From the IMG/VR virus record IMGVR_UViG_3300042482_000702, positions 186,001 to 250,000 of that record: 64,000 bases of DNA. The stretch is one strand, 5' to 3'. Made by a program: the position numbers and the translations under genes. Positions 5,990-21,200 of this stretch are shown here, one piece after another (position 1 is the first letter of the stretch; each line of letters begins with the position of its first letter). The notes beneath the pieces are model-generated. The model did not search any database, was not told the origin of the DNA, and saw nothing but the letters and a program-made list of their open reading frames with translations.

Positions 5990-8329
5990 TTATGGATATG
6001 ATAAAAATGATATAGATGCAACCTCTGTAATTGTATTATAAGATATTGAAGCCACTCTTCTCTTTATATTAACTCCTTCTCCACATAATCCTGTAATAAC
6101 ATTTATAGGGGTCGAAATGGAATTAGCCACAACCGTACCAGTACTTACAAATCTATTTGTTTCAATTCCATCAACAACCTCTTTTGAAATAACTCCACCT
6201 ATAAATGTTTCATATTTTACAGTGATTGGCTCTGTGCCAGAGGGTCCAGAATGCCAGCCAGCAAAACACTCCGCTATTATATCATTTTGAGTTAGAATTC
6301 CGCTATTTTCAAGATTTTTAAAGTTTATAACAACTGATTCCCCAAAAGTCCCAGCAACTGATTGACCAGCGTCATCACCTCCAAAGTAAAGGTAAGAAGT
6401 GTTTATATCAGATGTGACAGGTATAGGGTCTAAATCATCATTTGCACCACAACCAACAACACCTGTTCCAGGAATAAATCCAGTTGTATTACTTGATGAA
6501 GTACCTGACAATGCGCTAGTTGGATACCTAAAAGTAGTAAGTGTATCTAAATCATAATTCTGTCCATATTGATACGTTACAATGATATAGTCAAAAGGAT
6601 TAAGTACTACTGTTTGCGCTGTTATAAAACTTAATGGAGAACCATATCCTGTTCCAACTTGATTAGTAGCAAAAGCTCTAACCCAATATGTATTATTAGG
6701 TGTAAGAGATGTAAGGTTACTACTAAAATCACCTGTACCCGTTCCATCAGATGTACTACCTAATATAATCGCAAAATCTTGGGTAGCACTCCACTGAATT
6801 CCCTTAGCAGATATAGTACCATTGTTTGCGTTTATTGATACTCCTCCACTAGTTGCGGATGTGGTAGTAATATTTACAATAGTTGCGGTGACTAATGTCG
6901 GAACATCTACACTATTTAGATTAACTGTTAGACAACTAGGTATTTGAGACGCTCCGGCAATATTATTTACAACATTATCAACTAATGTTAAACCGTATGG
7001 GGAAGATGTGTTAATTAAATATATATTAGTCGAAGTCGTACTAACAGTATCAGTTATGTAAATATTTCCATTATTCTCAAAAATACCATAAGTACTACAA
7101 GTAATTGGTGATAATAAAGGTACATCAACTTCTATCACACCAGTTGAATAGTCCCATTGTGTTAAATAACAATATCTTATAGTATCAAAATCAACAGTAA
7201 CATCTACATAATTAAGTGCTAAAAATTTATCAGTTGTTGTTCTGAAAAAATCTCCAGTTATTCCCGAAGATTCAATGTTTGATATTCCCCTATTAATGAC
7301 TATTGGAAATTTAGTCGTCATAACCCCCGTCGTAACCCCTGAAATATTAATTTCGACCACCTCAAGTGGTGATGTCGACTTATTTACCGCCAAAATAACA
7401 TCATCTGAAATTGCTGCCAATCCTGCGGAACAACTAAAACCGGAAGGGTAAAATATTTCACGATTAAAAGTTGCGGTAAATGGTGATAATGTTATATTAT
7501 ATTCATAAAAACTTGTTCCGCCAGGCTCCCAAAGTTTATTGGCTGTATGAGCAATATCAAGCCCACCACTATACTGACTTGGCATTGTTAACTCTGTTGA
7601 ATCACCAGTATCAGCATTATAAACCCAAACTTTATCATTACTATCATTATATAATACAGCACAAGTTGATACAACAGGATTACTAGTTGGAGTTGGTGTT
7701 AATGTAGGTGTTGGTGTTAATGTAGGTGTTGGTGTCATTGTTGGCGTTTGTGTTTTTGTTGGTGTCATTGTTGGCGTTTGTGTTTTTGTTGGAGTCATTG
7801 TTGGCGTTTGTGTTTTTGTTGGAGTTATTGTTGGCGTTTGTGTATTTGTCGGAGTCGGAGTTGGTAGACAACTATTGTTAACACAAATATCATAAACTGA
7901 TATATTCACATTTTCATCCGCAAATGGTAACTTACCACAAAAATAAAAAGTCACTGATTGAGGAATTACACCGGTAAATATAGTTCCATTACATTGAGTA
8001 TAACCAAAATTTAAATTACCAGTCCCAACATTAATAAAGGCGATACAATTACACGAGATATTTGTTGGGGTTAATGTTGGTGTCGGAGTTAATGTTGGTG
8101 TAGGTGTAGGTGTAAAACAATTGATGTAATTCATTGTTTTACATCCTTTACTATCGGTTATAACCACCAATAATTTGTTAACCCCATTTAGTTGTGTTGG
8201 TGGTGTTATTGTTATAGGTGCAGATGTCACACCACTAATTACAAAATAACAATAAGTGTATGTTATATCACATACTGTGATACTAAAGGGTGAATTACCT
8301 ACTAAACTAGTGATTTCTATTGACTGCAT
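5990..8329 (-). CDS. Virion surface/fibre protein with Thr-Pro repeat linkers and an FN3-like domain
   Basis: TPTPTPTLTP and (TPTMTPTKTQ)n linkers; FN3-like segment F.S.LT.LTPN.TY.VRAFATN..GTGYG..SF.T of the type seen in Bacteroidota surface proteins. Confidence 0.65.
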   Translation of the reverse strand: MQSIEITSLVGNSPFSITVCDITYTYCYFVISGVTSAPITITPPTQLNGVNKLLVVITDSKGCKTMNYINCFTPTPTPTLTPTPTLTPTNISCNCIAFINVGTGNLNFGYTQCNGTIFTGVIPQSVTFYFCGKLPFADENVNISVYDICVNNSCLPTPTPTNTQTPTITPTKTQTPTMTPTKTQTPTMTPTKTQTPTMTPTPTLTPTPTLTPTPTSNPVVSTCAVLYNDSNDKVWVYNADTGDSTELTMPSQYSGGLDIAHTANKLWEPGGTSFYEYNITLSPFTATFNREIFYPSGFSCSAGLAAISDDVILAVNKSTSPLEVVEINISGVTTGVMTTKFPIVINRGISNIESSGITGDFFRTTTDKFLALNYVDVTVDFDTIRYCYLTQWDYSTGVIEVDVPLLSPITCSTYGIFENNGNIYITDTVSTTSTNIYLINTSSPYGLTLVDNVVNNIAGASQIPSCLTVNLNSVDVPTLVTATIVNITTTSATSGGVSINANNGTISAKGIQWSATQDFAIILGSTSDGTGTGDFSSNLTSLTPNNTYWVRAFATNQVGTGYGSPLSFITAQTVVLNPFDYIIVTYQYGQNYDLDTLTTFRYPTSALSGTSSSNTTGFIPGTGVVGCGANDDLDPIPVTSDINTSYLYFGGDDAGQSVAGTFGESVVINFKNLENSGILTQNDIIAECFAGWHSGPSGTEPITVKYETFIGGVISKEVVDGIETNRFVSTGTVVANSISTPINVITGLCGEGVNIKRRVASISYNTITEVASISFLSYP
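7686..7866. repeat. Coding tandem repeats (30-bp and 18-bp units) encoding a Thr-Pro mucin-like linker
   Basis: ttggtgtcattgttggcgtttgtgtttttg-like unit x3-4, plus ggtgttaatgtaggtgtt x2. Confidence 0.9.
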
Positions 8330-8333
8330 ATTG

Positions 8334-8373: not shown

Positions 8374-8401
8374 TTGACAAACATATTCGTTTTGTTATTT
8401 T
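8374..8401 (+). promoter_or_regulatory. sigma70-like promoter (TTGACA-16-TATTTT) for the glycosyltransferase pair
   Basis: ttgaca at 8374-8379 and tatttt at 8396-8401, directly before the ORF at 8403/8409. Confidence 0.45.
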
Positions 8402-8402
8402 T

Positions 8403-11141
8403 ATGGATATGAAAAAAATCTTAATTATAACCCCCCATTTAAGTACAGGTGGAGCTCCACAAGTAACTCTTAACAAAATAAAGTTGTTAAAAGACGATTG
8501 TATTATTAAATGCGTGGAATATTCCTTTATCGCTTGGAACTACGTCATTCAACGAAATCCACTTGAAAATATGTTATTAGATAATTTTCACTCATTAGGC
8601 GATAATAAATCTGAACTTATTAATATTCTAAAAGATTTTAACCCTGATGTTGTTAGTATGGAAGAATTCCCTGAATTCTTTATGGATGATAATATCACAA
8701 AAGAAATATATAAAGAAGACCGTAGATATACTATTTTTGAAACCACTCACGATTCTAGTTTTCCTGTTACATCAAAAAGATATTTTCCGGATAAATTTAT
8801 ATTTGTAAGTGCTTTTAACGCTTTCAGATATTCTATCTTTGATATTCCATATGAGATAATTGAATATCCTGTAGATGTTAAAATAAAAAATCAAAAAGAG
8901 AATCAAGAGAAATTAGATTTAAGTTCTGATTGGAAACATGTTGTTAATGTTGGTTTATTTACGGCAAGAAAAAATCAAAAATATCTTTTTGAGATTGCCG
9001 AATACTTAAAGAATTATAAAATTAAATTTCATTTTATTGGGAATCAAGCTGATAACTTTAAAGATTATTGGGAACCTTTAATTACTAACAAACCTAAGAA
9101 CGCCATTATTTGGGGTGAGAGAAATGATGTGGATAGTTTTATTCAGGCATCTGATGTGTTTTTCTTTTCATCGAAAGGTGACCGAAATAATAAGGAATTA
9201 AACCCTATCGCAATTAAAGAAGCTTTAGAGTATAAGATACCAATGATGATGTATAATTTGGAGGTTTATTGTGGTAAATACAATGATGAAAAATCAATCA
9301 CTTTTTTAACCGGCGATTTAAAACAAGATTCGGAAAACTTATTAAATATTTTGGGGGTTGAGGTTGATGATTCATTAACTTCCCATATAAATGATGATGA
9401 AGTTATTATTATTAGCACTTATCCTGACACTATTAAACGCAAAAATCTAACAATTGAATGTATTGAGAGTTTTAAACAATTAGGTAGAAAAATTATATTA
9501 GTTTCTCATTATCCGGTACCAAATGAGATACACGAGATGGCGGATTATTATGTTTTTGATTCAAATAATTTGATGATACCTCATTCATATTATACACACT
9601 TCTACAATAATACGAATCAATATAATGCCCAAATAAACATCAATGGATTATCAAATTCAAATCAATCATTGGCGGCACACATGAATTTTATGAATGGTGC
9701 TAAATTAGCCAAAGATATTGGTGCAACCAAATTTATGATAATCACTTATGATGTTATTCTAAATGATTTGGACATACCATTAATTGAAAAATATTTTAAT
9801 AAATTAACAACTTGGAACTGTTGTTTATCTTATATGGACAATGGTATTGAAACAACATCTATGGTGTTTAAAACTAGTTATTTTCTAAATACTTTTTTAG
9901 ACATTACTGATGAAGTAACCTTTAATAATCATTGTTCTGAATTGAAATGTCACAATTTTTTGGAAAATTATTATATGAAAATATTAGAAGGTAAAGAAAA
10001 CCTTTGGATTGAACATAACAATCAAAAAACTATTTTACCGAATTCGGGGTTGGGTGTATCATCTAATTCAGAATATTATTCTATTTTACCAGTTAATGAA
10101 ACTAAAAATAAATGGGTATTCTATTTTTATACTTATAATATTGATAATCGTAGATTAGAATTATCTATTAATAAATCGGGGAAAAACATCTTTAAAGATT
10201 CTATAATTATTTCCGAACGTAAGTCAGATTTAGTTTCGGATAGAGCAAAATATTTTAAACATATTGATTATGACGGAGAACCTATTGAAATTGTCATATC
10301 ATTTTATGATGGAGATAATTTACATAAAACAGAAACTTATGAATTAAATGATATTACAATTCACGAATACTATAACAATGGGTTTTTTAAAGAAAATAAT
10401 CAATCTTTAATATCTAATATTGAATCTCCGAAATATAACATTAAAATATTACATTTACAAACAACTATAAACGATGTTAGAGAACAGTTATCAAGAGAAT
10501 CTCTTCAGAAATTAAATGATTTTGGTTTTAATTATGTTTTACATAAAAATGTTCCGTACACATCATTACCACCGTCACATAATTGTTTAAGACCTCACAA
10601 TGTTAGGTTAGAGAAATACGATAATATTGATGACCCTGAGTACGGAAATGCTTTAACACCGGCTCATTATGGTTGTTTTGATTCATTTAAGTTAGGTATT
10701 TTATCAGAATTTGATAAAGAGTTAGATTTTCTAATTGTTTGTGAAGGTGATTGTATTATTGAAGTCCCTACGGAAGAATTTGTTAATAAAGTTAATATGG
10801 TTTGTGAAATAATTAACAATGAAGACATTTCTTACTTCTCATTTGGTGACACCAAAACATTAGATTTTGGGTGGCACCAATCCAATGAGATTAGAAAAAT
10901 CCCTAATCAAGATTTACTTTTTATCACCGATAAAATAATTGGATTACAATGTGTGATGTTCCCAATAAAAACTAGAGAATATCTTACCAATAAATTAAGA
11001 ACTGAAAAATGGGATTGTATGGATACATTTTTTAACATTATTTTTTCAAATAAAAATATGGGGATATTAAAGAATAGAATAACTACTCAGGCAGACGGAT
11101 TTTCTTTAATCGATAAAGAATTAAAAACATTTATAAAATAA
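8403..11141 (+). CDS. Multi-domain glycosyltransferase: N-terminal GT4 (GT-B), central GT-A-like domain, C-terminal GT25-like domain
   Basis: HLSTGGA...VGLFTARKNQ...SDVFFFSS...ELNPIAIKEAL (GT4); C-terminal HYGCFDS...LIVCEGDC resembles GT25 GC..SH...LILEDD. Confidence 0.7.
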   Translation: MDMKKILIITPHLSTGGAPQVTLNKIKLLKDDCIIKCVEYSFIAWNYVIQRNPLENMLLDNFHSLGDNKSELINILKDFNPDVVSMEEFPEFFMDDNITKEIYKEDRRYTIFETTHDSSFPVTSKRYFPDKFIFVSAFNAFRYSIFDIPYEIIEYPVDVKIKNQKENQEKLDLSSDWKHVVNVGLFTARKNQKYLFEIAEYLKNYKIKFHFIGNQADNFKDYWEPLITNKPKNAIIWGERNDVDSFIQASDVFFFSSKGDRNNKELNPIAIKEALEYKIPMMMYNLEVYCGKYNDEKSITFLTGDLKQDSENLLNILGVEVDDSLTSHINDDEVIIISTYPDTIKRKNLTIECIESFKQLGRKIILVSHYPVPNEIHEMADYYVFDSNNLMIPHSYYTHFYNNTNQYNAQININGLSNSNQSLAAHMNFMNGAKLAKDIGATKFMIITYDVILNDLDIPLIEKYFNKLTTWNCCLSYMDNGIETTSMVFKTSYFLNTFLDITDEVTFNNHCSELKCHNFLENYYMKILEGKENLWIEHNNQKTILPNSGLGVSSNSEYYSILPVNETKNKWVFYFYTYNIDNRRLELSINKSGKNIFKDSIIISERKSDLVSDRAKYFKHIDYDGEPIEIVISFYDGDNLHKTETYELNDITIHEYYNNGFFKENNQSLISNIESPKYNIKILHLQTTINDVREQLSRESLQKLNDFGFNYVLHKNVPYTSLPPSHNCLRPHNVRLEKYDNIDDPEYGNALTPAHYGCFDSFKLGILSEFDKELDFLIVCEGDCIIEVPTEEFVNKVNMVCEIINNEDISYFSFGDTKTLDFGWHQSNEIRKIPNQDLLFITDKIIGLQCVMFPIKTREYLTNKLRTEKWDCMDTFFNIIFSNKNMGILKNRITTQADGFSLIDKELKTFIK

Positions 11142-11152
11142 TAAATAACAAT

Positions 11153-13276
11153 ATGAGAATAACGCAAGTAACACCAGGAGTAATCCCTGTTCCACCTAAT
11201 GGATGGGGAGCCGTCGAAAAAATATTATGGTGCTATTATAAAGAATTTAATTCTTTAGGACACGAATGCACAATTAAATATTTAAACGAAGCGTCGACAG
11301 ATAATTCAGATATAATACATATCCATATCGCTAATTTGGCGTTAGACGCTGCGGAAAGAGGTATTCCTTATATTTTTTCCCTACACGACCATCATGTTGT
11401 TCATTACGGAAAAGATTCGTTTAATTATAAACAAAATTTAGAGGCAATACAAAAATCTGTAATATCATTTTGTCATGCGGAATATTTGGTTGATTACTTT
11501 GATGGGACTGATAAATTATTTTATTTATCTCACGGAGTTGAGGTTGATTATTTTAAAGTGGATAATTTATATAGGTCAGAGCATAAATTACTTTGTATTG
11601 CGAACAATGGTATCGGTGGTGATGTATCGTTTGATAGAAAAGGTTTTAGATACGCTATAGAGGCGGCAAAAAAACTAAATCTTCCAATAACAATTGCCGG
11701 ACCTGAAAATAATAAATCATTTTTTAAACATCATCCTGACTTATTAGAATATGAAAAATTAACGCTATTACTTACTAATTTAGGTGAAGATGAGATTTTA
11801 GAGTTATATAAATCACATTCAATATTTTTACACCCATCAATATTAGAAGCTGGTCACCCAAATTTAACATTATTGGAAGCGGTGTCTTGTGGACTTCCTG
11901 TTGTCGGAACATATGAGGGTTCTCAAAAAATAGATGGTATGGTTGTAACAGAGAGAAACTCTGATTCAGTAGCAAATTCTATTTCGGAAATAGTGGACCA
12001 ATACAAACATTATGTGGATTTAACTCAAAATAATAGAGATAAATTTGATTGGTCAATCATTTGCGAAAGAATGGTTAAAATGTATGAGGTAGTCACCTTA
12101 ATAAAAAAAGAATACACATCTGACGAAACTAAAAATTTATTTATAAAAAATTTTAACAATATAACGAAAACAATGGGATTAATAAACTCAAATAACCAAA
12201 ATGTAAAACCAAATGTAAAATATAATTTTCATTTTGTTAATCAACCTTTTTTTGAAATATTAGGAGATAGCGATAAAAAATTTAATGTTGGATTTTATGA
12301 TAGTGGTGGATTACATCATCACACGGAATTATCGTCAAATATGTGGACTAAAGTAAGTAGAGAATACTTTACAAATTGGTATATCAAAGTTTCTTGTGAT
12401 AATGACATTGTTTTTGAATATAACCTTGATTTAACAAATAGAAGAGTTTTCATTTCTTTTGAATCTAGTTCGTTGGGAGATAGTATTGCTTGGATACCAT
12501 ATGTTTTAGAATTTAAAAAACAACATAATTGTATTGTAATTGTCTCAACTTTTTGGAATAAATTATTTAAAAAATCCTACCCTGAATTAGAATTTGTTGA
12601 ACCAGGTTCAACTGTTAAAAATCTATTTGCGTTATATAGAATTGGATGGTTTGAAAATGAAACAAAGGAACCTTTTTACCCTAACACAATACCATTACAA
12701 AAAACAATCACAAATCTTTTAAAATTAGAACATACAGAAATTAAACCAATACTTGATTTTATACCTAAAGTAAAACCTATGGTTGAAAAATATATAACAA
12801 TAGCCGATGAGTCAACTGCCGGATTAAAACTATGGAATAACCCAAAAGGGTGGCAAGAACTTATTGATTATTTAACCGGATTAGGTTATAAAATTATTAA
12901 TATATCTAAACACGGTGGAAATTATAAAAATGTTACAAAATTAAAAGATACGTCAATAGAAAATACTATGAACTATATTCACCATAGTGAATTTTTTATA
13001 GGGTTATCAAGTGGGTTGTCTTGGCTTTCATGGGCGTTGGGTAAACATGTTGTAATGATTTCTAATTTTACTGAATCTGACCACGAATTTACATCAAATT
13101 GTACTAGGATAACAAATGATTCTGTGTGTAATGGATGTTGGAATAAATCAGAATTTAGGTTTGACCGTGGTGATTGGAACTGGTGTCCCGAACATAAGGG
13201 GACTCCTCGTCAATTTGAGTGTCATAAATCAATAACCTCTGAAATGGTGATAAAACAGATACAACATTTATTATAA
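11153..13276 (+). CDS. GT4 glycosyltransferase fused to a TibC/Aah-family (autotransporter) protein O-heptosyltransferase domain
   Basis: N-term PPNGWGAVE...RKGF...EAGHPNLTLLEAVSCGLPVV (GT4). C-term SLGDSIAW.PY...FFIGLSSGLSWLSWALGK.VVMISNFT...EF and CNGCWN-x-WCP.HK.T.RQFEC, the four-Cys iron site of the TibC/Aah family. Confidence 0.85.
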   Translation: MRITQVTPGVIPVPPNGWGAVEKILWCYYKEFNSLGHECTIKYLNEASTDNSDIIHIHIANLALDAAERGIPYIFSLHDHHVVHYGKDSFNYKQNLEAIQKSVISFCHAEYLVDYFDGTDKLFYLSHGVEVDYFKVDNLYRSEHKLLCIANNGIGGDVSFDRKGFRYAIEAAKKLNLPITIAGPENNKSFFKHHPDLLEYEKLTLLLTNLGEDEILELYKSHSIFLHPSILEAGHPNLTLLEAVSCGLPVVGTYEGSQKIDGMVVTERNSDSVANSISEIVDQYKHYVDLTQNNRDKFDWSIICERMVKMYEVVTLIKKEYTSDETKNLFIKNFNNITKTMGLINSNNQNVKPNVKYNFHFVNQPFFEILGDSDKKFNVGFYDSGGLHHHTELSSNMWTKVSREYFTNWYIKVSCDNDIVFEYNLDLTNRRVFISFESSSLGDSIAWIPYVLEFKKQHNCIVIVSTFWNKLFKKSYPELEFVEPGSTVKNLFALYRIGWFENETKEPFYPNTIPLQKTITNLLKLEHTEIKPILDFIPKVKPMVEKYITIADESTAGLKLWNNPKGWQELIDYLTGLGYKIINISKHGGNYKNVTKLKDTSIENTMNYIHHSEFFIGLSSGLSWLSWALGKHVVMISNFTESDHEFTSNCTRITNDSVCNGCWNKSEFRFDRGDWNWCPEHKGTPRQFECHKSITSEMVIKQIQHLL

Positions 13277-13277
13277 C

Positions 13278-13303
13278 AAAAAACCCCAATTAAGGGGTTT
13301 TTT
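13278..13303. terminator. Bidirectional intrinsic terminator between convergent genes
   Basis: aaaaaacccc-aattaa-ggggtttttt hairpin with A/T tails on both sides. Confidence 0.85.
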
Positions 13304-14178
13304 TATTGTTTTCTAATTGAATCTATAATTTGATTTACATCAAAAATTTCATTTAAGTCATTATACGGAATACTTGTCATATCTTGGAATAATAAATATT
13401 TAGAGTAATGACCATGGTCTAACATTAGTTCTTTTGTTGGTGTGTTAGCCATTATATTTGTATTGGTGTGGTATCCAAATACATTAGGGTTAGTTCCAAC
13501 CCAAGTAACAACAGATGGAAGATTTAATGATGCCGCAATGTGCATAACACTTGAATCTATTAATAATCGTTTTTTAGATAAACTCAATAAAATTGCAATA
13601 CTTCTAAAATCATCTAACGCTTGTAAAGTGTCTTCATAAACAAATTGGTCTTCTCTTTTAATGTGAAGAATTGCGTAATCATTTTTAAAATATCTAATCA
13701 CTTCCTCTATTGTTGGTTGAGGTATATCACGAGTCCAACTATATTTTAAAGGTTGTCCTACAGCACCACCATTTGGTTGTATAACCATAATTGGTTTATC
13801 CACTTTATAGAATTGTGTGAAGTATTGTTTTTCGGCTTCAGATATAAAAATTTCAGGTAATTCACCTCTATACTCAACACCAAACATTTCACACCAAATC
13901 TGAATTAAGTGTTTAGATTCCGTAATGTAATCTGATGTTTGATATGGTTCACCAACAAACACTTTGGCGTCTTGGTCCATAATGTACTTAGCGTACAGCC
14001 CTGATAATTGTCCGTGATTTAATACCTTGTTCATATTTGGATTGTTAATAAAAACATCCGGAAAACCAGTTACTACAATTATATAACCGTCAGGGTATTG
14101 TCTTCTAATGGCTTTTAATACGGCGGTTCCCATTACGGATTTCCCCAATCCACCTTCTATTGAAAATATTATATTCAT
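13303..14178 (-). CDS. GT9-like (ADP-heptose:LPS heptosyltransferase fold) glycosyltransferase
   Basis: GGLGKSVMGTAVLKAIRRQYPD at N-term; IDSSVMHIAASLNLPSVVTWVGTNP..FGY matches the GT9 DSG.MH.A.A...P motif. Confidence 0.75.
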   Translation of the reverse strand: MNIIFSIEGGLGKSVMGTAVLKAIRRQYPDGYIIVVTGFPDVFINNPNMNKVLNHGQLSGLYAKYIMDQDAKVFVGEPYQTSDYITESKHLIQIWCEMFGVEYRGELPEIFISEAEKQYFTQFYKVDKPIMVIQPNGGAVGQPLKYSWTRDIPQPTIEEVIRYFKNDYAILHIKREDQFVYEDTLQALDDFRSIAILLSLSKKRLLIDSSVMHIAASLNLPSVVTWVGTNPNVFGYHTNTNIMANTPTKELMLDHGHYSKYLLFQDMTSIPYNDLNEIFDVNQIIDSIRKQ

Positions 14179-14190
14179 ATTTGTTTTTTT

Positions 14191-14637
14191 TTAATTGTTT
14201 AATATTTTTTTTATACATTCATTAACACCAATACTTGTTGTGTCAATATCAATAAAGTTTTCTGTTGGAGGTTCATAGTCATCAACAAACAAATTCTCCC
14301 TACCTCTAATTTCGGATGTGTGAACATAAATCTCTGTGATTTTTCTACCCATCTTTTTTTTAAATTTATCTCTTTGGTCTTTATATGGTGATACTAATGA
14401 AACAACAATATTAACACTTTGAGAACTGAGATATTGGGACATTTGTTGAGCAAGTTGAATATTTTTTCTTCTACCATCTTCAGAATAATCTTTATTATCA
14501 AATAAATCTCTAATATCATCACCATCAATGTGGAAACATAATTCCCTTTTAATATCAATAAGTGATGAAGATAATTCTTTTCCCAATGTTGTTTTACCAG
14601 CGCCCGGCTGACCTGTTATCCAATATATGTTAGACAT
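14191..14637 (-). CDS. cysC: Adenylylsulfate (APS) kinase, compact form; likely start 14637 rather than 14718
   Basis: WITGQPGAGKTT P-loop, IDGDDIR, DYS..GR..NI, VSLVSPY...R, EIYV, YEPP; ATG overlaps the sulfotransferase stop. Confidence 0.85.
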   Translation of the reverse strand: MSNIYWITGQPGAGKTTLGKELSSSLIDIKRELCFHIDGDDIRDLFDNKDYSEDGRRKNIQLAQQMSQYLSSQSVNIVVSLVSPYKDQRDKFKKKMGRKITEIYVHTSEIRGRENLFVDDYEPPTENFIDIDTTSIGVNECIKKILNN

Positions 14638-15451
14638 ACCCAAAATAATCATAAAACCATTTATAATGATTCTTAATGTTGGTTGATAATTCATAACCCA
14701 ATATATCCAAATAATCATCCGGTAATTTTCTAAATTCTTTTCTCAATACATGGTCACCATATATACCGTGAACAACATCATTTTCGTTTGTCACCTGTTC
14801 GATATATTCAAAATTGTGTTCTTGATACATTGGTTGTCCAACATAGTCGTAAAATCGTTTTAATTCTCTTTCAGGGTTATCCATCAAATCCTCGTATCTA
14901 ATAAATAAAATTTTAGTATGAAGTCCTTGTTGGAAGATATCTTGTAGTCGGTCTAATGTCACACCAACCGGTGGACCACTAGCCCAAATATCTATTCGTT
15001 TGTTTACAGTTGTTCCAACCAATTCGTTTGGGTTCTGTATATGATTTTCTTTGTGGGGGTTTTTTCTGAAGTTTTTTTCCATTGAGGAATAGACACATCT
15101 AATGTCTCTAACCATACAAACAATCTTTGGGTCTTCTTTGAATAAACTCAATAGATTGTAATTAATACCCCACCCTCGACTCTTGTCTAACACATATGGT
15201 TTATCTGTTAATTCCTCAAAGAATCCTTGAATCCCTTTTCTACAAAAATTAATGAATGCTTTTTCCATTAATTTGGGGTCTTGTGCTCTAATTTCTTGAG
15301 AACCATTATAATGATTTTTAGCTCCCGATACCAACTCAATTAATCCTGAAGTTGGGGTTACGTAAAATTGGGGGTTTTGTCCGATTAAATTTTGAAATAG
15401 GGTTGACCCTGCTCTAGGTAGAGAAGAGTTAAAAAAGATTATCTTATCCAT
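14630..15451 (-). CDS. PAPS-dependent sulfotransferase
   Basis: 5'-PSB loop SLPRAGSTL, 3'-PB motif KIVCMVRD...VYSS, IRYEDL...P. Confidence 0.85.
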   Translation of the reverse strand: MDKIIFFNSSLPRAGSTLFQNLIGQNPQFYVTPTSGLIELVSGAKNHYNGSQEIRAQDPKLMEKAFINFCRKGIQGFFEELTDKPYVLDKSRGWGINYNLLSLFKEDPKIVCMVRDIRCVYSSMEKNFRKNPHKENHIQNPNELVGTTVNKRIDIWASGPPVGVTLDRLQDIFQQGLHTKILFIRYEDLMDNPERELKRFYDYVGQPMYQEHNFEYIEQVTNENDVVHGIYGDHVLRKEFRKLPDDYLDILGYELSTNIKNHYKWFYDYFGYV

Positions 15452-15500
15452 AAATTATAACATATATTTGTGTTAATAATAAATGGATGTTGAATTGTTG

Positions 15501-15592: not shown

Positions 15593-15856
15593 TTATAGTA
15601 ATATTGTTCCGATGATAGCACCTAATGTTGTGAAGGCGATGTCATAGTAATCAAAAGGGGCTTCGTGATATTTTCCATGATACCATTCCCAAACAAACCC
15701 TATTACATATCCAAATAGACCTGCAACAAATGCCTGTCCAATCTTTCCGATGTCAAAGGAGGGGTCGTATTTTATTAATAACCAAATAAATGGTGTCACT
15801 ATTAAAGCACCACCAAGTATGTGTAGGTAATATCGCTGTTTAAAAAAATTATTCAT
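15593..15856 (-). CDS. Small integral membrane protein (87 aa)
   Basis: Three hydrophobic segments; LH..GG...WE......FD..D...T..G pattern. Confidence 0.7.
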   Translation of the reverse strand: MNNFFKQRYYLHILGGALIVTPFIWLLIKYDPSFDIGKIGQAFVAGLFGYVIGFVWEWYHGKYHEAPFDYYDIAFTTLGAIIGTILL

Positions 15857-16039: not shown

Positions 16040-18220
16040 TTAAAATGTTACTGTCCAGCCTTTATTTGTTGCAATTGTTTTTGTGCAACCTGCTACTCCT
16101 GTGCAACCTGTTATATTAATTGTTTTTGTTGTTACTGTTGTTAAGTCTGTGAATAACTGATTCAACGCTGCTATATCTAAATCACAATAAGAAACATTTA
16201 TTTGTGGTGATGTTCCTGTCCATTGTCCTGCTCCTGTATTTAAAAGTCTTAGACTATTTAGTCTACTGAAGTTTGTTGCACTGGTACCGTTAATTGCTAA
16301 TAACGAGAATGGACAACTAAAACTTAGTGATGGTAGTCGGTTGGCTTGAGTAATAACACCAGCTGATACTAGAGGTGTAGCTGTTAAACTACCTAATTTA
16401 TTTAGATTATTTATTGTAGTTAGGTTACTGCATTGAGCAAATATAGAGGTTAATGTAGTTAGTGCTGATGTTTGAGTTGTTGGTAATGTTAATGTCTGTA
16501 AATTAACACATTGTACAAATGCTGATGCAAAGGTTGTTAAGGATGCAGAAACTGTTGCCGGCATTGTTATGGAAGTTAGTGACCAACAACCATTAAAGGT
16601 ATTAAGAAAAGTTGTACAACCATTCATACTAGTTGGCATTGTAACTGAGGATAGAGATTCACAAGTATTAAAACAGTTAGCTGCAGTAGTTACCAAATTC
16701 ATTGTTGATGGAAAAGCTACACTAGTAAGTAGTAAACAATTCTGGAATGTTGTTGATAATGATGTTGCTGCTGTCATGCTGGTAGGCATCGTTATAGATT
16801 CTAATTTGTTACATCCCAAACACATAGACGCCATTGAGGTAATACTGTTTTGAGTATTATTTGGAAGAGCTATTGTTTTTAAATTAATACAATTTTGAAA
16901 AGCAGTACTTAAACTGGTTATTGTCCATCCAGACGGTATTGTTATTGAAGGTAATACATAACAGCTATCAAACATTCCGGCCATTCCAATAGTTGCTCCA
17001 ACTGTTGTTGGTAGGGTAACAGATGTTAGTAGATAACATCCACTAAAACAACTAGTAGCGACAGTCAAATTCGCCATCCCTGATTGAAAAACAACTCTTG
17101 TTAGTGACTCGCATCCAAGAAAGCAACTAGATAATGCTGAAGCATTAAAGTTTGTTGGAAAAGTTATAGTCTTTAAATTAACAACACCATTAAATGTTGA
17201 GGTTAGGTTATATACGGCATTACTTGAGCAGGTTGATGGTAGATATACGTTCTGTAAACTAGTACATGACGGGTTAAATGCTGTGGTAAGGTTTACTGCT
17301 GTTGCGGGGCTGGCTGGTGATGGTAGTGATGTAAATTTAACCCACTGTAGTGAGCGACAAGAACCAAACGCACTCTCTAAACTTACTACTAAATTAATAC
17401 TAGGTAAGGTAATATTTTTTAAACTAGCACAGTTTTGAAATGCTGTTAGTAGGGTTGTACAACTATTTAATGTTGTTGGGAATAATACTGTTCTAAGATT
17501 TATACAACCATTAAATGTAAGAGTTAAGTTAGTTATGGTAGTAGCATTTGATGGCAGTACTATATCTCGTAGATTAGTACAACTATTACACATGCTTGTT
17601 AAATTAGTTAATGAATCGGCAGATGTTGGCATCACAATTTTATATAAACTACCACAGTTCATAAACATAGCTACCATTTGAGTTGTCCAAGCAACTGAAG
17701 AAGGTAGTTTTACATATTCCAATAATTCAAAAGTGGAAACTGAAGTTGTACCACCAGCAGAAGAAAAATAAGTACCGGTTAATTCTGTTGTATTACAAGT
17801 GTTATCCCCAAAATACGCCTCTAACAATCCAACATTATAATAAATAGCACCTCCGGTAACCGTAAAATTAGACAAATGTTTGGCGTTAGTTATGACACAG
17901 GTTGCGTCACCATATATTCTTATTTTAAATGTGTTATACCCTCTATAACAAGGAGTACCTCCTGTTGAATAGACGTGTTCAGTTGTTGTAGAGGTAATAG
18001 TTGATATTGTATCTACGGTACCATCTCCCCAATCAATATAAATATTTCCTGAAGTTCTTGTAAATGTGGTTTGAATTGCAAATGCCTTCGCACTTGTATC
18101 GGCAACTAAAAACTGAACCTCATTTGCGGTGTCAGTAATTGTTATCCAGTCAGAAGGTCTTACCCAATCAGATGGTGTTGCAATTGGCGCTATTGAATTT
18201 ATTGGTACATTAAAAGCCAT
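16040..18220 (-). CDS. BspA-like leucine-rich-repeat protein with PKD-like N-terminus (putative receptor-binding protein)
   Basis: Many F..C..L..(I/V).(L/M)P repeats; IDWGDG; C-terminal IATNKGWTV cap. Confidence 0.8.
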   Translation of the reverse strand: MAFNVPINSIAPIATPSDWVRPSDWITITDTANEVQFLVADTSAKAFAIQTTFTRTSGNIYIDWGDGTVDTISTITSTTTEHVYSTGGTPCYRGYNTFKIRIYGDATCVITNAKHLSNFTVTGGAIYYNVGLLEAYFGDNTCNTTELTGTYFSSAGGTTSVSTFELLEYVKLPSSVAWTTQMVAMFMNCGSLYKIVMPTSADSLTNLTSMCNSCTNLRDIVLPSNATTITNLTLTFNGCINLRTVLFPTTLNSCTTLLTAFQNCASLKNITLPSINLVVSLESAFGSCRSLQWVKFTSLPSPASPATAVNLTTAFNPSCTSLQNVYLPSTCSSNAVYNLTSTFNGVVNLKTITFPTNFNASALSSCFLGCESLTRVVFQSGMANLTVATSCFSGCYLLTSVTLPTTVGATIGMAGMFDSCYVLPSITIPSGWTITSLSTAFQNCINLKTIALPNNTQNSITSMASMCLGCNKLESITMPTSMTAATSLSTTFQNCLLLTSVAFPSTMNLVTTAANCFNTCESLSSVTMPTSMNGCTTFLNTFNGCWSLTSITMPATVSASLTTFASAFVQCVNLQTLTLPTTQTSALTTLTSIFAQCSNLTTINNLNKLGSLTATPLVSAGVITQANRLPSLSFSCPFSLLAINGTSATNFSRLNSLRLLNTGAGQWTGTSPQINVSYCDLDIAALNQLFTDLTTVTTKTINITGCTGVAGCTKTIATNKGWTVTF

Positions 18221-18224: not shown

Positions 18225-21200
18225 TTATGTTGTTTGTGTTATTATAATATCTACCGTCATATTTGCGTCAGGTGGAAATTGAGAGTAAAATGTTGCGACT
18301 CCTGAAGCAACACCTACATAAGGTAATACTTGTGCGTTATACGCTGTTAGATAACTTGCATTTTGTGGTGTGACAGATACATCACAATTTGCGGTAATAT
18401 TTACATTACTGAATGAGTATGTGTAATATCCTGACACTAATGTCCACGATGATGCGGTTAATGTTTGACCTGTAAGTTTAATTGGTGTTGAACCTCCACC
18501 ACCTGAACTTGTTCCACTAGTACCTGACATTCCTGATGTTCCCGCAATACCATTTTCTCCTGATGTCCCTGATGAACCACTAACCCCTATTCCACTTGTT
18601 CCACTAGAACCTGCGGCTCCTGATGTTCCTGAAGAACCGCTATTACCAGTACTACCAGATGTTGTTACTAATAAACCATTTGCTCCAACACAGATTGAAC
18701 ATCCCGATGAACCAGTGAAACTACAAACAGATAAGTCATTAACAAATGTTGTACACGCTCTATTCGCTGTTATATTACTACCTATGATGTTAGAATGAGG
18801 AAAGGAAGATGATATTGTGTTTAATTGACCACCAAGGATTGATGAATAAGAACTAGAAACAGAATTACAACAACCACCACCGACTGTTGACAAAGGGCTA
18901 AAAGTTTTATTACCTTTACCACCAGCAATTGTTGAACAATTTCCACAACTAGCGTTACCATAACCACCACCAATAAATGATGTTGTCCCCGATGCAATGT
19001 TACTTATACCACCAACAACAACAGACGCACATCCAAAAGCTGTGTTACCAATATAAGTCAAAGGGTCCCAAAATCCACCACCAACGAATGAATAGTAACC
19101 TAAAGCACAATTACCTTTACCACCACCAATTGTTGAGGAACGACCACAAGCCCTATTACTCCTACCACCCGCAATTGTTGAGTAGTAACCGTTGGCATGA
19201 TTAGCATCACCCCCTCCAACTGTTGATATATACTTAGCACAATTATTAGAACCACCAGCGATTGTTGCAGTTGAACACGTAGTATAATTACCCTGACCAC
19301 CACCAATGGTTGAGATACTACCGCTACAAATATTATTACTATAACCACCACCAATTGTTGTATAAGCACCTGAACCTGTCTTATTACGACAACCACCACC
19401 AATAGTTTGATTAAGATAAGAGGTAACATTATAGGCACCACCACCAATGGTTGAACAATGTCCCGTTGCAGAGTTTTTAAATCCACCACCAACTGTTGAG
19501 GTATTTCCTGAAGAAATATTAAAATGACCACCACCGATGGTTGTATGAACTCCACCGACAGTGTTACAACGACCTCCACCAATGGTTGTAAAACCAACAT
19601 AAGGAGTTGAGGTATTACAATAACCTCCTCCTATTGTATTACCACCAGTATTTAAACTAACCCCTCCATATACGTTTGTATTAATAGTATTTTTATTTCC
19701 ACCGTTAATAACATCACCTATTCTTGGAGATGTATTATTATAGTTTTGTGATGGAAATATTCTGTTACAACAACCACCACCGATAAATGATGTTGTTCCT
19801 GACGATACATTATTTTGACCTCCAACAACTGTCGAAAAATTACATGATGCAGTATTTCCACTACCCGCTAATGCGGCTGAAAAACACGATGATGCTGTAT
19901 TATTAACACCACATCTAATAGTCGAATTAACACCTGTTCCGGTAATGATTATACTATCACCACCTCCACCACCAGAAGCAACAGGAATTAATAAACCATT
20001 TGCTCCAACACAGATTGAACATCCAGATGACCCAGTAAAACTACAAACAGATAAGTCATTAACAAATGTTGTACAAGTTCTATTTGCGGTTATATTACTA
20101 CCTATGATGTTAGAATGAGGAAAGGAAGATGATATTGTGTTTAATTGACCACCAAGGATTGATGAAAAATTACCACAAACAACATTACGAAAACCACCAT
20201 TAATGGTATTACATCCATATTCAGGAAATATATTGTTACAATAACCACCATTAATGGTATTACCACCAACAATATTATATGCACCACTATTTGAGTGGAT
20301 AGTATTACAACCACCTCCTCCAATAATATTTGGTATAATACTATAAAGATTACCGTTAGTGGTAAAATTACAAATAGTGTTACAACATCCACCACCAATT
20401 GTTGAGTTATCAGCAATAGCTCTATTTAATACACCACCGCCAATTGTAATATTACATCCAACAACTGTTCCGGTACAAGATGTGTTTGTAAAAGTGAGTG
20501 TTTGTCCGGCAGTAAAATAAGTGTTTGTTGGGATTTTTGTAAGTCCCGATGAATAGTTTACACCATACGTACAAGATATAACCGCAACACAATTAACCCA
20601 TTTATTTGTTTGGTTGTAAACCATTAATGTTGTTGAGTAAGGGGTAAATTGACTAACAAGATTACCTGAAACATATATATATGCACCATTAACACAAACG
20701 GAGTTAAATCTTGGTGTGTTTGAAATAAAATTCATTACTCCACCACCAATAGTTGACACAGGACCTTTTGATATATTACCTTGACCACCACCAATAACTG
20801 AACAACCATTAAATATGATATTATCACCTCCTCCTCCAATTGTTGAGGTATTACCAGACGAGATATTACTAATACCTCCACCAACTGTTGAACAATTACC
20901 TGTTGCGCGGTTACTTATACCACCACCAATAAATGATGTTGTTCCTGATGCAACATTACCTAGTCCACCAACAACAGCAGACGCAAATCCGAAAGCTGTG
21001 TTACTAATATAAGTTGTACCCTCTCTACATCCACCACCAACGAATGAATAGTCACCTAAAGCACAGTTATACCACCCACCACCAATTGTTGAAGATTTCC
21101 CACATGCTTTATTACTTCTACCACCACCAATTGTTGAGTAGAAACCTTTGGCACAATTATTACCACCACCTCCAACTGTTGATATATATGTAGCGCAATT

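What the first reader, a model, noticed from the sequence alone, without database searches (positions are those of the whole stretch)
8403..15451. Candidate phage-encoded virion O-glycosylation plus sulfation system embedded in the fibre gene block
Seen: five modification genes (three-domain GT, GT4::TibC/Aah fusion, GT9-like, APS kinase, sulfotransferase) converge on one terminator in the middle of ~29 kb of fibre/adhesin genes. Those genes carry extreme Ser/Thr tracts (GTSGSS, TPTPT, STIGGG). Known: TibC/Aah enzymes O-glycosylate Ser in beta-helix repeats of adjacent autotransporters; APS kinase makes PAPS, the donor for sulfotransferases. Inference: the phage primes Ser/Thr on its own fibres, extends the glycan and sulfates it, giving a mucin- or proteoglycan-like virion coat. 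That could give protease resistance or stiffening, or mimic the sulfated glycans that Bacteroidota bind and import. No ATP sulfurylase or ADP-heptose pathway is in this window, so donors would come from the host or elsewhere in the genome.
Basis: partly seen in the sequence, partly recalled or inferred. Interest (0 to 1): 0.92.

Follow-up and report, generated by a model that had tools for sequence, protein, structure and literature searches.

The report
Phage fibre glycosylation and sulfation genes
A 322-kb environmental jumbo phage carries, inside its tail-fibre gene block, two conserved enzyme sets (sugar-adding enzymes including a bacterial adhesin-glycosylating type, plus a sulfate-donor kinase and sulfotransferase) that most likely decorate the phage's own fibres. 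If confirmed, this would be the first sulfated virion known in a bacterial virus.

Summary
Five modification genes at 8403-15451 converge on a bidirectional terminator (13278-13303) inside a block of fibre-like genes with Ser/Thr-rich repeats.

Domain calls mostly confirmed:
- g2 carries a GT4 domain fused to a genuine TibC/Aah-family (BAHT) domain, above NCBIfam's equivalog cut-off.
- g1 is GT4 + a viral-only domain + a GT25-like domain.
- g4 is APS-kinase-like; g5 is a sulfotransferase with intact PAPS motifs.
- g3 is only GT9-like, with Lys where the family has its catalytic Asp.

New here: the cassette is two separable modules.
- In viral contigs centred on the TibC-like gene, 31 of 44 clusters have a Ser/Thr-rich collagen-like ORF within 10 kb; 2 have a STIGGG-repeat ORF.
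- The sulfotransferase sits beside the GT9-like gene in 72 of 80 loci and the APS kinase in 57 of 80. In 28 of 35 clusters a STIGGG-repeat ORF is nearby.
- None of 80 PhoH-centred control loci has either repeat type.
- The STIGGG repeats model as a YadA-like adhesin head.

Fibre modification is the best reading (about 0.55). The heptose donor, one prime-extend-sulfate pathway and a Bacteroidota host are unsupported. No biochemical evidence exists. It is a new variant of known virion glycosylation.

The parts
8403..11141 (+). g1, a 912-aa multidomain glycosyltransferase: GT4 (residues 1-320), a viral-only alpha/beta plus beta-sandwich region (333-664), and a GT25-like domain (680-912, with an invariant C-E-G-D-C motif)
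   Evidence: Pfam. AF2 model with mean pLDDT 78.8. VIA Z 25 for residues 3-320. Foldseek COLGALT1 E 5e-9. Atlas GT25 clusters. 20-sequence alignment A1. Its Atlas cluster has 1348 members, 99% viral.
11153..13276 (+). g2, 707 aa: an N-terminal GT4 domain (about residues 1-320) fused to a TibC/Aah-family (BAHT) O-glycosyltransferase domain (residues 385-705, nt 12305-13267)
   Evidence: TIGR04414 280.6 bits, over the cut-off of 200. TibC chain 4rap E 4e-48. Asp110, Thr226, Lys230, Trp305 and the four iron-finger Cys are conserved in 57-58 of 58 phage homologues, but Arg286 is not.
13278..13303 (.). Bidirectional intrinsic terminator shared by the two convergent arms
   Evidence: 10-bp stem with 4 G-C pairs, an A-run on the 5' side and a T-run on the 3' side.
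13303..14178 (-). g3, a 291-aa GT9-like GT-B protein with Lys in place of the family's catalytic Asp. It is the constant partner of the sulfotransferase.
   Evidence: PF01075 20.4 bits, under the cut-off of 22. JGI names its homologues ADP-heptose:LPS heptosyltransferase. Lys13 is invariant and aligns with the catalytic Asp of WaaF and of the TibC-like domain. It lies next to g5 homologues in 72 of 80 loci.
14191..14637 (-). g4, an APS-kinase-like P-loop kinase. It probably starts at Met28, giving 148 aa; the ORF as called runs to 14718.
   Evidence: PF01583 E 7e-19. Archaeal APS kinase 7yq0 E 7.5e-14, with the P-loop, the D-G-D motif and the S-P-Y..R stretch aligned. It scores below the TIGR00455 cut-off (72 against 138.7). 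Homologues are 132-161 aa.
14630..15451 (-). g5, a 273-aa PAPS-dependent sulfotransferase with no signal peptide
   Evidence: PF13469 55.5 bits and PF00685. phrog_27463 E 1e-36. A 5'-phosphosulfate motif P-R-A-G-S-T at residues 12-17 and an R-D..S motif at residues 115-122 are read directly from the sequence. 1812 metagenomic homologues.
15593..15856 (-). 87-aa hydrophobic small protein between the fibre genes and g5. Whether it belongs to the system is uncertain.
   Evidence: Sequence. Conserved at this position in the closest relatives. Other loci also have a roughly 100-aa ORF here.
18225..23795 (-). 1856-aa fibre protein, the best candidate substrate. Three Ser/Thr-rich collagen-like runs (nt 22671-23183, 21765-22139, 18501-18653) and two YadA-like-head beta-roll modules of 15-residue STIGGG repeats (nt 20010-21749, 18651-19994).
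   Evidence: Pfam Collagen E 3.5e-41. PHROG tail-fibre families. Sequence. Repeat alignment A3. AF2 model pTM 0.71. VIA Z 22.2 to the BpaC head, 16.8 to UspA1 and 12.5 to YadA.
60242..62308 (-). 688-aa collagen-like (GTSGSS) fibre protein next to the portal gene, a further candidate substrate
   Evidence: Sequence. PHROG tail-fibre families.
5990..8329 (-). 779-aa protein with TPTPT linkers, divergent from g1. Its N-terminal 150 aa are conserved beside g1 in relatives.
   Evidence: Sequence. tblastn in 19 of 80 loci, always just upstream of g1.
23813..24832 (-). 339-aa protein with an approximately 85-residue Thr/Pro-rich stretch. It recurs beside the sulfation module in other lineages.
   Evidence: Sequence. 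Homologues follow the sulfotransferase/APS kinase in L218-219 and L235-241.
25560..29318 (-). 1252-aa protein with a DUF285 domain and TP linkers; first gene of the co-directional fibre run that ends with g5-g4-g3
   Evidence: Pfam DUF285 E 1e-44. Sequence. TATAAATA at 29349-29356 (- strand), just upstream.
16040..18220 (-). 726-aa BspA-type leucine-rich-repeat protein (Thr 17.5%) lying between the 1856-aa fibre and the sulfation module
   Evidence: Pfam LRR_5 E 1e-43. Composition.

Best explanation
The region encodes two conserved, cytoplasmic modules that modify the phage's own long fibre proteins after translation and before assembly.

**Module A (g1 + g2).** It supplies four glycosyltransferase-type domains: GT4, GT25-like, GT4 and a TibC/Aah-type protein O-glycosyltransferase. 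I infer that the TibC-like domain puts the first sugar on Ser/Thr hydroxyls of the repeat-rich fibres and that the other domains extend it. The collagen-like GTSGSS stalks are its most constant genomic partner. The donor sugar is unknown and need not be heptose.

**Module B (g3 + g4 + g5).** It makes PAPS from host APS (g4) and transfers sulfate (g5). This happens together with a GT9-like protein (g3) of uncertain catalytic status. Its constant genomic partner is the YadA-like-head (STIGGG) beta-roll module of the fibres. I infer that the sulfate goes on a sugar attached there, or less likely directly on a protein hydroxyl.

**Shown:** domain identities, conserved catalytic and cofactor residues, gene order, and conserved linkage across many viral lineages.

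**Inferred:** the substrates, the order of the reactions, the donors and the timing of expression.

**Likely effect:** a negatively charged, glycan-coated fibre. That could alter receptor or matrix binding, or protect the fibre from proteases.
For: 1. The BAHT domain is a member by sequence: TIGR04414 280.6 bits over the cut-off of 200, and TibC E 4e-48. The catalytic Asp, three of four sugar-contact residues and all four iron-finger Cys are kept in 57-58 of 58 phage homologues. The family is described only as a protein O-glycosyltransferase acting in the cytoplasm on beta-solenoid adhesins encoded next to it (PMC4358343).
2. Loci centred on the TibC-like gene: 61 of 80 (31 of 44 dereplicated clusters) have a Ser/Thr-rich G-X-Y ORF within 10 kb, and 13 have one within about 730 bp.
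3. Loci centred on the sulfotransferase: 62 of 80 (28 of 35 clusters) have a STIGGG-repeat ORF, 19 within about 530 bp and usually co-directional just upstream.
4. Controls centred on PhoH, from the same phage group: 0 of 80 loci (1.48 Mb) have either feature.
5. The two modules differ in partner type (Fisher p 7e-4 and 1e-12). This serves as an internal control, because both sets lie in fibre regions.
6. The sulfotransferase lies next to the GT9-like gene in 72 of 80 loci and next to the APS kinase in 57 of 80, in several different gene orders.
7. The g1-type GT4 domain and the TibC-like domain are fused into one ORF in several lineages.
8. g5-g4-g3 close a co-directional run of fibre genes. 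The same holds in loci that lack the TibC-like gene.
9. The STIGGG module is a YadA-like head (Z 22.2, 23% identity to BpaC). This is the adhesin class that BAHT relatives accompany in bacteria (BimC with BimA, abstract of PMC11499645).
10. The association recurs in a cultured phage, Microcystis phage Mel-JY01, and in a MAG contig.
11. More glycan genes flank the same fibre block.
12. None of the five proteins has a signal peptide.
Against: - There is no biochemical or proteomic evidence of any modification.
- Accessory genes unrelated to virion structure often sit near tail-fibre genes, so adjacency alone is weak evidence.
- The loci are not phylogenetically independent. The control region is not a structural region.
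- 13 of 44 TibC-like clusters show no collagen-like ORF within 10 kb. These include the 735-kb phage LR756501, which has the g1+g2 pair.
- The genome's largest collagen/STIGGG fibre gene, at 70-77 kb, has no cassette beside it.
- Known BAHT acceptors are Ser residues in beta-helices, not collagen-like repeats.
- Arg286 of TibC is not conserved, and the beta-hairpin thumb is about 10 residues shorter.
- g3 lacks the canonical catalytic Asp.
- Sigma-70-like promoter matches precede g1 and g5, rather than the TATAAATA motif seen before some structural genes. Neither motif is enriched over chance, so late co-expression is not shown.
Confidence: 0.55

Rival explanations
1. The enzymes remodel the infected host's envelope glycans (LPS core, capsule or exopolysaccharide) rather than the virion. 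For example, they might add sulfated or unusual sugars to block superinfection or to ease release. They would sit near the fibre genes only because accessory genes often insert there.
For: - GT4, GT9 and GT25 are classic LPS/polysaccharide families. The nearest folds to the g1 GT4 domain include HepE, WaaG and PglA.
- JGI names the g3 homologues LPS heptosyltransferase.
- The only named family hit to g5 is NoeE, a carbohydrate sulfotransferase, and it is weak (E 9.5e-4).
- Sigma-70-like promoter matches lie upstream of g1 and g5.
- 13 of 44 TibC-like clusters have no collagen-like ORF nearby.
Against: - The TibC/Aah family is described only on protein acceptors.
- The two modules have specific and different linkage to two fibre repeat types, across rearranged loci.
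- No membrane-anchoring, flippase, polymerase or lipid-carrier genes lie in the cassette.
- The phage has a T4-like capsid and portal. No integrase was looked for.
Confidence: 0.15
2. The virion is the target, but the sulfate goes directly onto Tyr, Ser or Thr hydroxyls of the YadA-like-head or collagen-like repeats, not onto a glycan. g3 would be a non-catalytic or differently acting partner. Module A would glycosylate independently.
For: - The g3 family has an invariant Lys where GT9 and BAHT enzymes have the catalytic Asp.
- From my own knowledge, the Pfam Sulfotransfer_3 family also holds protein tyrosine sulfotransferases.
- Iyer et al. 2010 predicted bacterial operons in which sulfotransferases and PAPS synthetases modify co-encoded collagen-like or phage tail-collar proteins (PMC2938197).
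- The sulfation trio occurs without any TibC-like gene within 10 kb in 46 of 80 loci.
Against: - The near-obligate pairing of the sulfotransferase with a GT-B-fold protein (72 of 80 loci) is most simply explained by sugar then sulfate.
- In the Iyer model, dioxygenases create the hydroxyl groups. No 2OG-Fe(II) oxygenase (PF13640) is found in this genome.
- Bacterial Ser/Thr O-sulfation has no characterised precedent that I know of.
Confidence: 0.15
3. The genes are unrelated metabolic add-ons. The APS kinase would be a cysC-type auxiliary gene that boosts host sulfur assimilation. The transferases would act on DNA bases or on small molecules.
For: - From my own knowledge, APS kinase genes in viromes are usually read as sulfur-assimilation genes.
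- T4-like phages are known to glycosylate DNA (as cited in PMC12619734).
- A second glycosyltransferase block lies beside nucleotide-metabolism genes at 32106-43117.
Against: - The APS kinase travels with a sulfotransferase in 57 of 80 loci. That points to PAPS as a sulfate donor, not as an assimilation intermediate.
- The genome has no ATP sulfurylase and no PAPS reductase family gene.
- The TibC-like domain is protein-directed.
- The cassette is not beside DNA-metabolism genes.
Confidence: 0.05

Closest known systems
TibC/Aah bacterial autotransporter heptosyltransferases (BAHT family; TibC-TibA, Aah-AIDA-I)
   Same: - The g2 C-terminal domain passes the NCBIfam equivalog cut-off.
- It keeps the catalytic Asp, Thr226, Lys230, Trp305 and the four iron-finger Cys.
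- It is cytoplasmic.
- It is encoded next to repeat-rich adhesin-like proteins with a beta-solenoid module.
   Different: - It is phage-encoded and fused to a GT4 domain. In other lineages it is fused to other GT or methyltransferase domains, or stands alone.
- Arg286 is not conserved.
- The beta-hairpin thumb that builds the dodecamer is about 10 residues shorter.
- No autotransporter is present.
- The most constant neighbour is a collagen-like Ser/Thr repeat protein, not a 19-residue beta-helix.
- The donor is unknown, and the phage has no ADP-heptose genes.
Mycobacteriophage virion glycosylation (Freeman et al. 2023, cited in PMC12619734)
   Same: Phage-encoded glycosyltransferases lie beside structural genes and are thought to O-glycosylate the phage's own virion proteins.
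   Different: - There, the glycans sit on C-terminal tails of capsid and tail-tube subunits, and this was shown by experiment.
- Here, the candidate acceptors are fibre repeats and the enzyme set is different (BAHT, GT25-like, GT9-like).
- Here there is a PAPS/sulfotransferase module.
- Here nothing has been shown experimentally.
Predicted bacterial hydroxylase-sulfotransferase-PAPS synthetase operons acting on collagen-like or tail-collar proteins (Iyer et al. 2010, PMC2938197)
   Same: A sulfotransferase and PAPS-making enzymes are genomically linked to collagen-like or phage-fibre-like proteins proposed as their substrates.
   Different: - Those operons are bacterial and centred on 2OG dioxygenases that create the hydroxyl. 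None is found here.
- Here the partner is a GT9-like protein, and the linked repeat is a YadA-like head.
Trimeric autotransporter adhesins with YadA-like heads (BpaC, UspA1, YadA), some of them glycosylated (EmaA)
   Same: - The STIGGG modules of the fibre model as the same left-handed beta-roll (Z 22.2, 23-32% identity).
- They are combined with trimeric stalks.
   Different: - The stalks here are collagen-like rather than coiled coil.
- There is no membrane anchor.
- It is part of a phage fibre.
Collagen-like glycoproteins with dedicated glycosyltransferases (Bacillus BclA; animal COLGALT1, family GT25; Mimivirus fibrils). Listed from my own knowledge apart from the COLGALT1 fold match.
   Same: - Collagen-like repeats with hydroxyl-bearing residues carry O-glycans.
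- The g1 C-terminus resembles the GT25 collagen galactosyltransferase fold.
   Different: - The repeats here are Gly-Thr/Ser-Ser, without hydroxylysine or Pro.
- The GT25 likeness rests on structure and feature searches only.
- Sulfation is not part of those systems.

Membership tests
BAHT (TibC/Aah O-heptosyltransferase), g2 residues 385-705 | Sequence score above the curated equivalog cut-off (TIGR04414) | tested here: met
   280.6 bits against a cut-off of 200. TibC 4rap E 4e-48 over chain residues 62-379.
BAHT (TibC/Aah O-heptosyltransferase), g2 residues 385-705 | Catalytic base Asp110 | tested here: met
   Asp443 of g2 aligns with it. Asp in 58 of 58 phage homologues. Residue role from PMC4358343.
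BAHT (TibC/Aah O-heptosyltransferase), g2 residues 385-705 | Four iron-finger cysteines (Cys339, 342, 358, 370) | tested here: met
   Cys659, 662, 678 and 690 of g2; conserved in 57-58 of 58 homologues.
BAHT (TibC/Aah O-heptosyltransferase), g2 residues 385-705 | Sugar-contact residues Thr226, Lys230, Trp305 and Arg286 | tested here: not met
   Thr, Lys and Trp are kept in 57 of 58. Arg286 is Thr in g2, and is Arg in only 3 of 58 homologues. The donor may therefore differ.
BAHT (TibC/Aah O-heptosyltransferase), g2 residues 385-705 | Beta-hairpin thumb that builds the dodecameric ring | tested here: inconclusive
   The alignment has gaps totalling about 10 residues around TibC residues 258-280. 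The oligomeric state is not testable here.
BAHT (TibC/Aah O-heptosyltransferase), g2 residues 385-705 | Uses ADP-heptose and modifies Ser of an adjacent autotransporter beta-helix | not testable with these tools
   No GmhA or cytidylyltransferase-like gene in the genome. No autotransporter is present. The neighbours are phage fibres with collagen-like and YadA-like-head modules.
GT9 heptosyltransferase, g3 | Pfam PF01075 score above the gathering cut-off | tested here: not met
   20.4 bits against 22, matching only the C-terminal nucleotide-sugar region. A profile search against PDB gives WaaF at E 0.39.
GT9 heptosyltransferase, g3 | Catalytic Asp in the first beta-alpha loop (G-D) | tested here: not met
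   An invariant G-K is at this position. It aligns with the G-D of WaaF and with the catalytic Asp of the phage TibC-like domain (hhalign E 8e-4, probability 24%). The alignments are weak.
APS kinase (CysC), g4 | Family score, P-loop and D-G-D motif | tested here: met
   PF01583 68.7 bits against 21.1. The P-loop, D-G-D and S-P-Y..R stretches align with solved APS kinases. It is below the stricter TIGR00455 cut-off (72 against 138.7), so it is a divergent member.
PAPS-dependent sulfotransferase, g5 | Family score and the two PAPS-binding motifs | tested here: met
   PF13469 55.5 bits against 27 and PF00685 44.1 against 22. P-R-A-G-S-T and R-D..S are read in the sequence. The acceptor class is not testable.
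GT25 (LPS and collagen galactosyltransferases), g1 residues 680-912 | Sequence-family match and a metal-binding acidic motif | tested here: inconclusive
   No Pfam hit even at E 10. 79 of 100 nearest Atlas clusters carry PF01755. Foldseek matches COLGALT1 at E 5e-9 but with high rmsd across domains. An invariant E-G-D stands where D-x-D is expected.
YadA-like head (trimeric autotransporter adhesin), STIGGG modules of the 1856-aa fibre | Left-handed beta-roll of roughly 14-16-residue repeats | tested here: met
   15-residue period. All-beta solenoid model, pTM 0.71. Z 22.2 to BpaC, 16.8 to UspA1, 12.7 to BoaA and 12.5 to YadA, with 16-32% identity. Foldseek alone found nothing significant, and there is no Pfam hit.
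Phage virion glycosylation system | Glycans demonstrated on virion proteins | not testable with these tools
   Only genomic linkage is available.

The most novel reading that the evidence does not exclude
A large group of environmental T4-like jumbo phages coats its fibres with O-glycans that carry sulfate. A TibC-type enzyme works on collagen-like Gly-Ser/Thr repeats, which would be a new acceptor class for that family. A phage-borne PAPS supply with a sulfotransferase acts on YadA-like heads. This would be the first sulfated glycoprotein of a bacterial virus. It would also mean that viral 'cysC' genes are virion-building genes, not sulfur-assimilation genes.
Probability: 0.3. Interest if true: 0.85.

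Novelty: new variant of a known kind. Interest (0 to 1): 0.72.

Why it matters
Virion glycosylation by phage-encoded enzymes has been shown only for mycobacteriophages. There it changes how the particles are recognised. This cassette would extend the idea in three ways:
- to tail fibres, the host-recognition organs;
- to an enzyme family known so far only from pathogenic bacteria's adhesins;
- to sulfation, which has no precedent in phages in the literature I could search.

The gene families are abundant. There are more than 1,000 metagenomic homologues each for g3 and g5, and g1's Atlas cluster has 1348 members. Any function would therefore apply to a widespread group of aquatic phages.

It also changes how APS-kinase genes in viromes should be read. 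Here the kinase travels with a sulfotransferase, not with assimilation genes.

A cultured relative, Microcystis phage Mel-JY01, carries the TibC-like gene near an unannotated GTSGSS collagen-like gene. That makes the question directly testable.

Tried and rejected
- **Near-identical DNA in the phage collection:** none.
- **Literature:** searches for phage TibC-like enzymes, phage sulfotransferases, cysC with sulfotransferase, and glycosylated collagen-like tail fibres found no direct prior description. The 'moraphage' paper (PMC12619734) describes a different lineage and says nothing on these genes.
- **PDB by sequence:** nothing for g1, alone or as a profile.
- **Foldseek on the STIGGG model:** nothing significant. 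Only the Foldseek-independent search found the YadA-like heads.
- **T4-type late promoter motif TATAAATA:** not enriched (23 found against 18.2 expected). Sigma-70-like sites are not enriched either, so expression timing stays open.
- **Collagen-like ORF composition:** comparing Ser/Thr content in loci with and without the TibC-like gene was uninformative. Only 10 ORFs came from loci without it (p 0.25).
- **Metatranscriptome:** one run holds contigs 90-95% alike over the cassette, including one across the convergent terminator. This does not prove transcription.
- **Bacterial genomes:** a scan found one relative, on a MAG contig that looks viral, so no host could be assigned.
- **DNA hypermodification and sulfur assimilation:** considered and rated unlikely (see the rival explanations).
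- **Genome-level presence/absence test across whole related contigs:** not run. The long contigs available are close relatives that would all carry everything.

Full report
**What the window is.** The window is bases 186001-250000 of a single 322,477-bp viral contig that CheckV rates complete. It encodes a T4-like major head protein, portal and prohead protease. The nearest cultured relatives by capsid protein are Microcystis phage Mel-JY01 (42% identity) and Flavobacterium 'immuto' phages (41%). This is therefore an environmental jumbo phage whose host is unknown.

**The observation.**
- g1 (8403-11141) and g2 (11153-13276) run rightwards.
- g5 (14630-15451), g4 (14191-14718) and g3 (13303-14178) run leftwards.
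- The two arms meet at a perfectly symmetrical hairpin, A6C4-loop-G4T6, at 13278-13303. It can terminate both strands.
- g5-g4-g3 are the last genes of a co-directional run. The run starts with the 1252-aa DUF285 protein and passes through the 192-, 339-, 1856- and 726-aa proteins.
- The 1856- and 688-aa proteins match PHROG tail-fibre families, partly through their collagen-like runs.

**What the enzymes are.**
- *g2.* It has an N-terminal GT4 domain. Its C-terminal domain is a member of the TibC/Aah family by sequence: TIGR04414 scores 280.6 bits against an equivalog cut-off of 200, and solved TibC aligns at E 4e-48. I took residue roles from the TibC structure paper (PMC4358343). The catalytic Asp110, Thr226, Lys230, Trp305 and all four iron-binding Cys are present in g2 and in 57-58 of 58 distinct phage homologues. 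Arg286, another sugar contact, is Thr in g2 and is Arg in only 3 of 58. The hairpin 'thumb' that builds the TibC dodecamer is about ten residues shorter.
- *g1.* Modelled with 20 homologues (pLDDT 78.8), it has a GT4 domain (Z 25), a region known only from viruses, and a C-terminal domain. The C-terminal domain's nearest Atlas clusters are GT25, and it matches the human collagen galactosyltransferase by Foldseek. Pfam does not see that domain.
- *g4.* It has the P-loop and the D-G-D motif of APS kinases. It probably starts at Met28.
- *g5.* It has both PAPS-binding motifs.
- *g3.* It is the weakest call. It scores under the GT9 cut-off. Its family has an invariant Lys where GT9 and TibC have the catalytic Asp.
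- *Missing supply genes.* The genome has no ATP sulfurylase, PAPS-reductase-family, GmhA, cytidylyltransferase-like or NTP-transferase gene. APS and the nucleotide sugars must therefore come from the host.

**The comparative test.**
- *Loci fetched.* I fetched up to 80 viral-contig loci (plus or minus 10 kb) around relatives of g2, of g5 and, as a control, of the PhoH gene of the same phage group.
- *Features scored.* I scored each locus for two features. One is a Ser/Thr-rich G-X-Y (collagen-like) ORF. The other is an ORF with five or more STIGGG-type repeats.

| Loci centred on | With collagen-like ORF | With STIGGG-repeat ORF |
|---|---|---|
| TibC-like gene (g2) | 61 of 80 | 4 of 80 |
| Sulfotransferase (g5) | 27 of 80 | 62 of 80 |
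| PhoH (control) | 0 of 80 | 0 of 80 |

- *Sources.* The table draws.
- *After dereplication.* The figures are 31 and 2 of 44 clusters for the TibC-like gene. They are 11 and 28 of 35 clusters for the sulfotransferase (Fisher p 7e-4 and 1e-12).
- *Distances.* In 13 TibC-like clusters the collagen-like gene is within about 730 bp. In 19 sulfotransferase clusters the STIGGG gene is within about 530 bp, usually directly upstream on the same strand.
- *Module B linkage.* The sulfotransferase is next to the GT9-like gene in 72 of 80 loci and next to the APS kinase in 57 of 80, in several gene orders. The TibC-like gene is present in only 34 of those 80 loci.
- *Module A linkage.* The g1-type GT4 domain and the TibC-like domain are fused in some lineages.
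- *Conclusion.* The cassette is two modules, each with its own preferred fibre-repeat partner. This window joins them beside one protein that has both repeat types.

**What the STIGGG repeat is.**
- It has a 15-residue period.
- It models as an all-beta solenoid (pTM 0.71).
- Foldseek found nothing significant.
- The Foldseek-independent search gave the head of the trimeric autotransporter adhesin BpaC at Z 22.2 (23% identity). Next came UspA1, CbpF, BoaA and YadA heads.
- The 1856-aa fibre is therefore built from collagen-like stalks and two YadA-like heads.
- This recalls the bacterial setting of the TibC family, which sits next to beta-solenoid adhesins. One relative, BimC, accompanies the trimeric autotransporter BimA (abstract of PMC11499645).

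**Independent instances.**
- *Mel-JY01.* Its 1226-aa protein, annotated 'methyltransferase FkbM', ends in a TibC-like domain. About 2 kb upstream, on the same strand, lies an unannotated GTSGSS collagen-like ORF with runs of up to 149 triplets. GenBank annotates its antisense Pro-rich frames instead.
- *MAG contig.* It has a g1-type::TibC-like fusion 532 bp from a collagen-like ORF.
- *Counter-examples.* The 735-kb phage LR756501 has the g1+g2 pair without a collagen-like ORF within 12 kb. This genome's largest collagen/STIGGG fibre gene, at 70-77 kb, has no cassette next to it.

**Interpretation.** The most likely reading is that both modules modify the phage's own fibres in the cytoplasm before assembly.
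- For module A, the argument rests on the protein-directed nature of the TibC family and on the conserved linkage.
- For module B, it rests on the linkage alone. A kinase that makes PAPS, travelling with a sulfotransferase, points to sulfate transfer rather than sulfur assimilation.
- Whether the sulfate lands on a sugar or on the protein is open. The constant GT-B partner favours a sugar. Its missing catalytic Asp, and the earlier prediction of sulfated collagen-like and tail-collar proteins in bacteria (PMC2938197), favour the protein.
- The main rival is remodelling of the host envelope. These glycosyltransferase families are classic LPS/polysaccharide enzymes, and accessory genes often sit near fibre genes.

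**Limits.**
- All evidence is genomic.
- The loci are related to one another, so the counts overstate the number of independent events.
- The control region is not a structural region.
- Expression timing is unknown.
- The GT25 and GT9 assignments are weak.

**Novelty.** Virion glycosylation by phage enzymes is known from mycobacteriophages. TibC-type enzymes are known from bacteria. Sulfation of collagen-like proteins has been predicted for bacteria. I found no description of TibC-like enzymes or of a PAPS/sulfotransferase module in phage fibre loci. I therefore rate this a new variant of a known kind. It is of high interest because it is widespread and testable in a cultured phage.

Noticed in passing
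It holds a GT (phrog_7162), a Methyltransf_24, an NAD epimerase/dehydratase whose best (weak) hit is ADP-heptose 6-epimerase, a sugar C-methyltransferase, three GT2-type genes and a GT1-like gene. These are mixed with an exonuclease, a dUTPase and PhoH. Two of them (41242-43117) are conserved beside PhoH in 77-79 of 80 related loci.
   Followed up: partly
L247 (genome 170001-186000, just left of the window), - strand, locus 2406-9592: A third glycan block abuts the fibre genes. It holds a TylF-type O-methyltransferase fused to HtrL_YibB, an FtsJ-like methyltransferase, a GT10 fucosyltransferase-like gene, a Methyltransf_24, and a PF11397 'GlcNAc' glycosyltransferase (236 bits). From my own knowledge, PF11397 includes polypeptide GlcNAc-transferases. 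Next come fibre-like proteins of 1653 aa (Laminin_G_3, Fib_succ_major) and 1329 aa.
   Followed up: partly
L081 (Microcystis phage Mel-JY01, PP395634) 1-2600: GenBank CDSs 1-651 and 739-2298 (- strand, Pro-rich) look like antisense frames of an unannotated + strand GTSGSS collagen-like gene with runs of up to 149 triplets. The same antisense artefact appears in this genome, for example the + strand ORF 21643-22143 in the window and 73906-75531 in the genome.
   Followed up: yes
genome 65611-78579 (outside the window): A second fibre locus holds a 2463-aa collagen-like protein with 38 STIGGG repeats and a 965-aa TP-linker protein. In relatives (L245), homologues of these proteins sit directly upstream of the sulfotransferase and GT9-like pair. 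Here they have no cassette beside them.
   Followed up: partly
window 14630-14718: The 89-nt overlap of g4 with g5 is probably an ORF-calling artefact. Homologues are 132-161 aa, and the match to APS kinases begins at Met28 (nt 14637), two bases after the g5 stop codon.
   Followed up: yes
window 63006-63950, - strand: A complete 314-aa ORF matches only the C-terminal (nuclease) part of large terminase (phrog_2 positions 441-594 of 807). This suggests a split or interrupted terminase gene.
   Followed up: no
window 25432-25439, 25494-25501, 29349-29356, 56751-58260: TATAAATA (the T4 late-promoter -10 consensus) lies just upstream of several structural genes: the 192-aa gene, the DUF285 gene and the prohead protease. 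It is not upstream of g1 or g5, and the motif is not enriched overall.
   Followed up: partly
L243 12142-12543: In a related locus, a 133-aa cytidylyltransferase-like gene (weak Pfam hit) directly follows the APS kinase. Mel-JY01 has a 639-aa 'cytidylyltransferase like protein' 3 kb from its TibC-like gene. Some lineages may therefore activate their own sugar. This genome has no such gene.
   Followed up: no
window 10500-16400: One public metatranscriptome run holds contigs that are mostly 90-95% alike, covering nearly the whole cassette, including one contig across the convergent terminator. This is compatible with transcription of relatives but also with DNA carry-over.
   Followed up: partly
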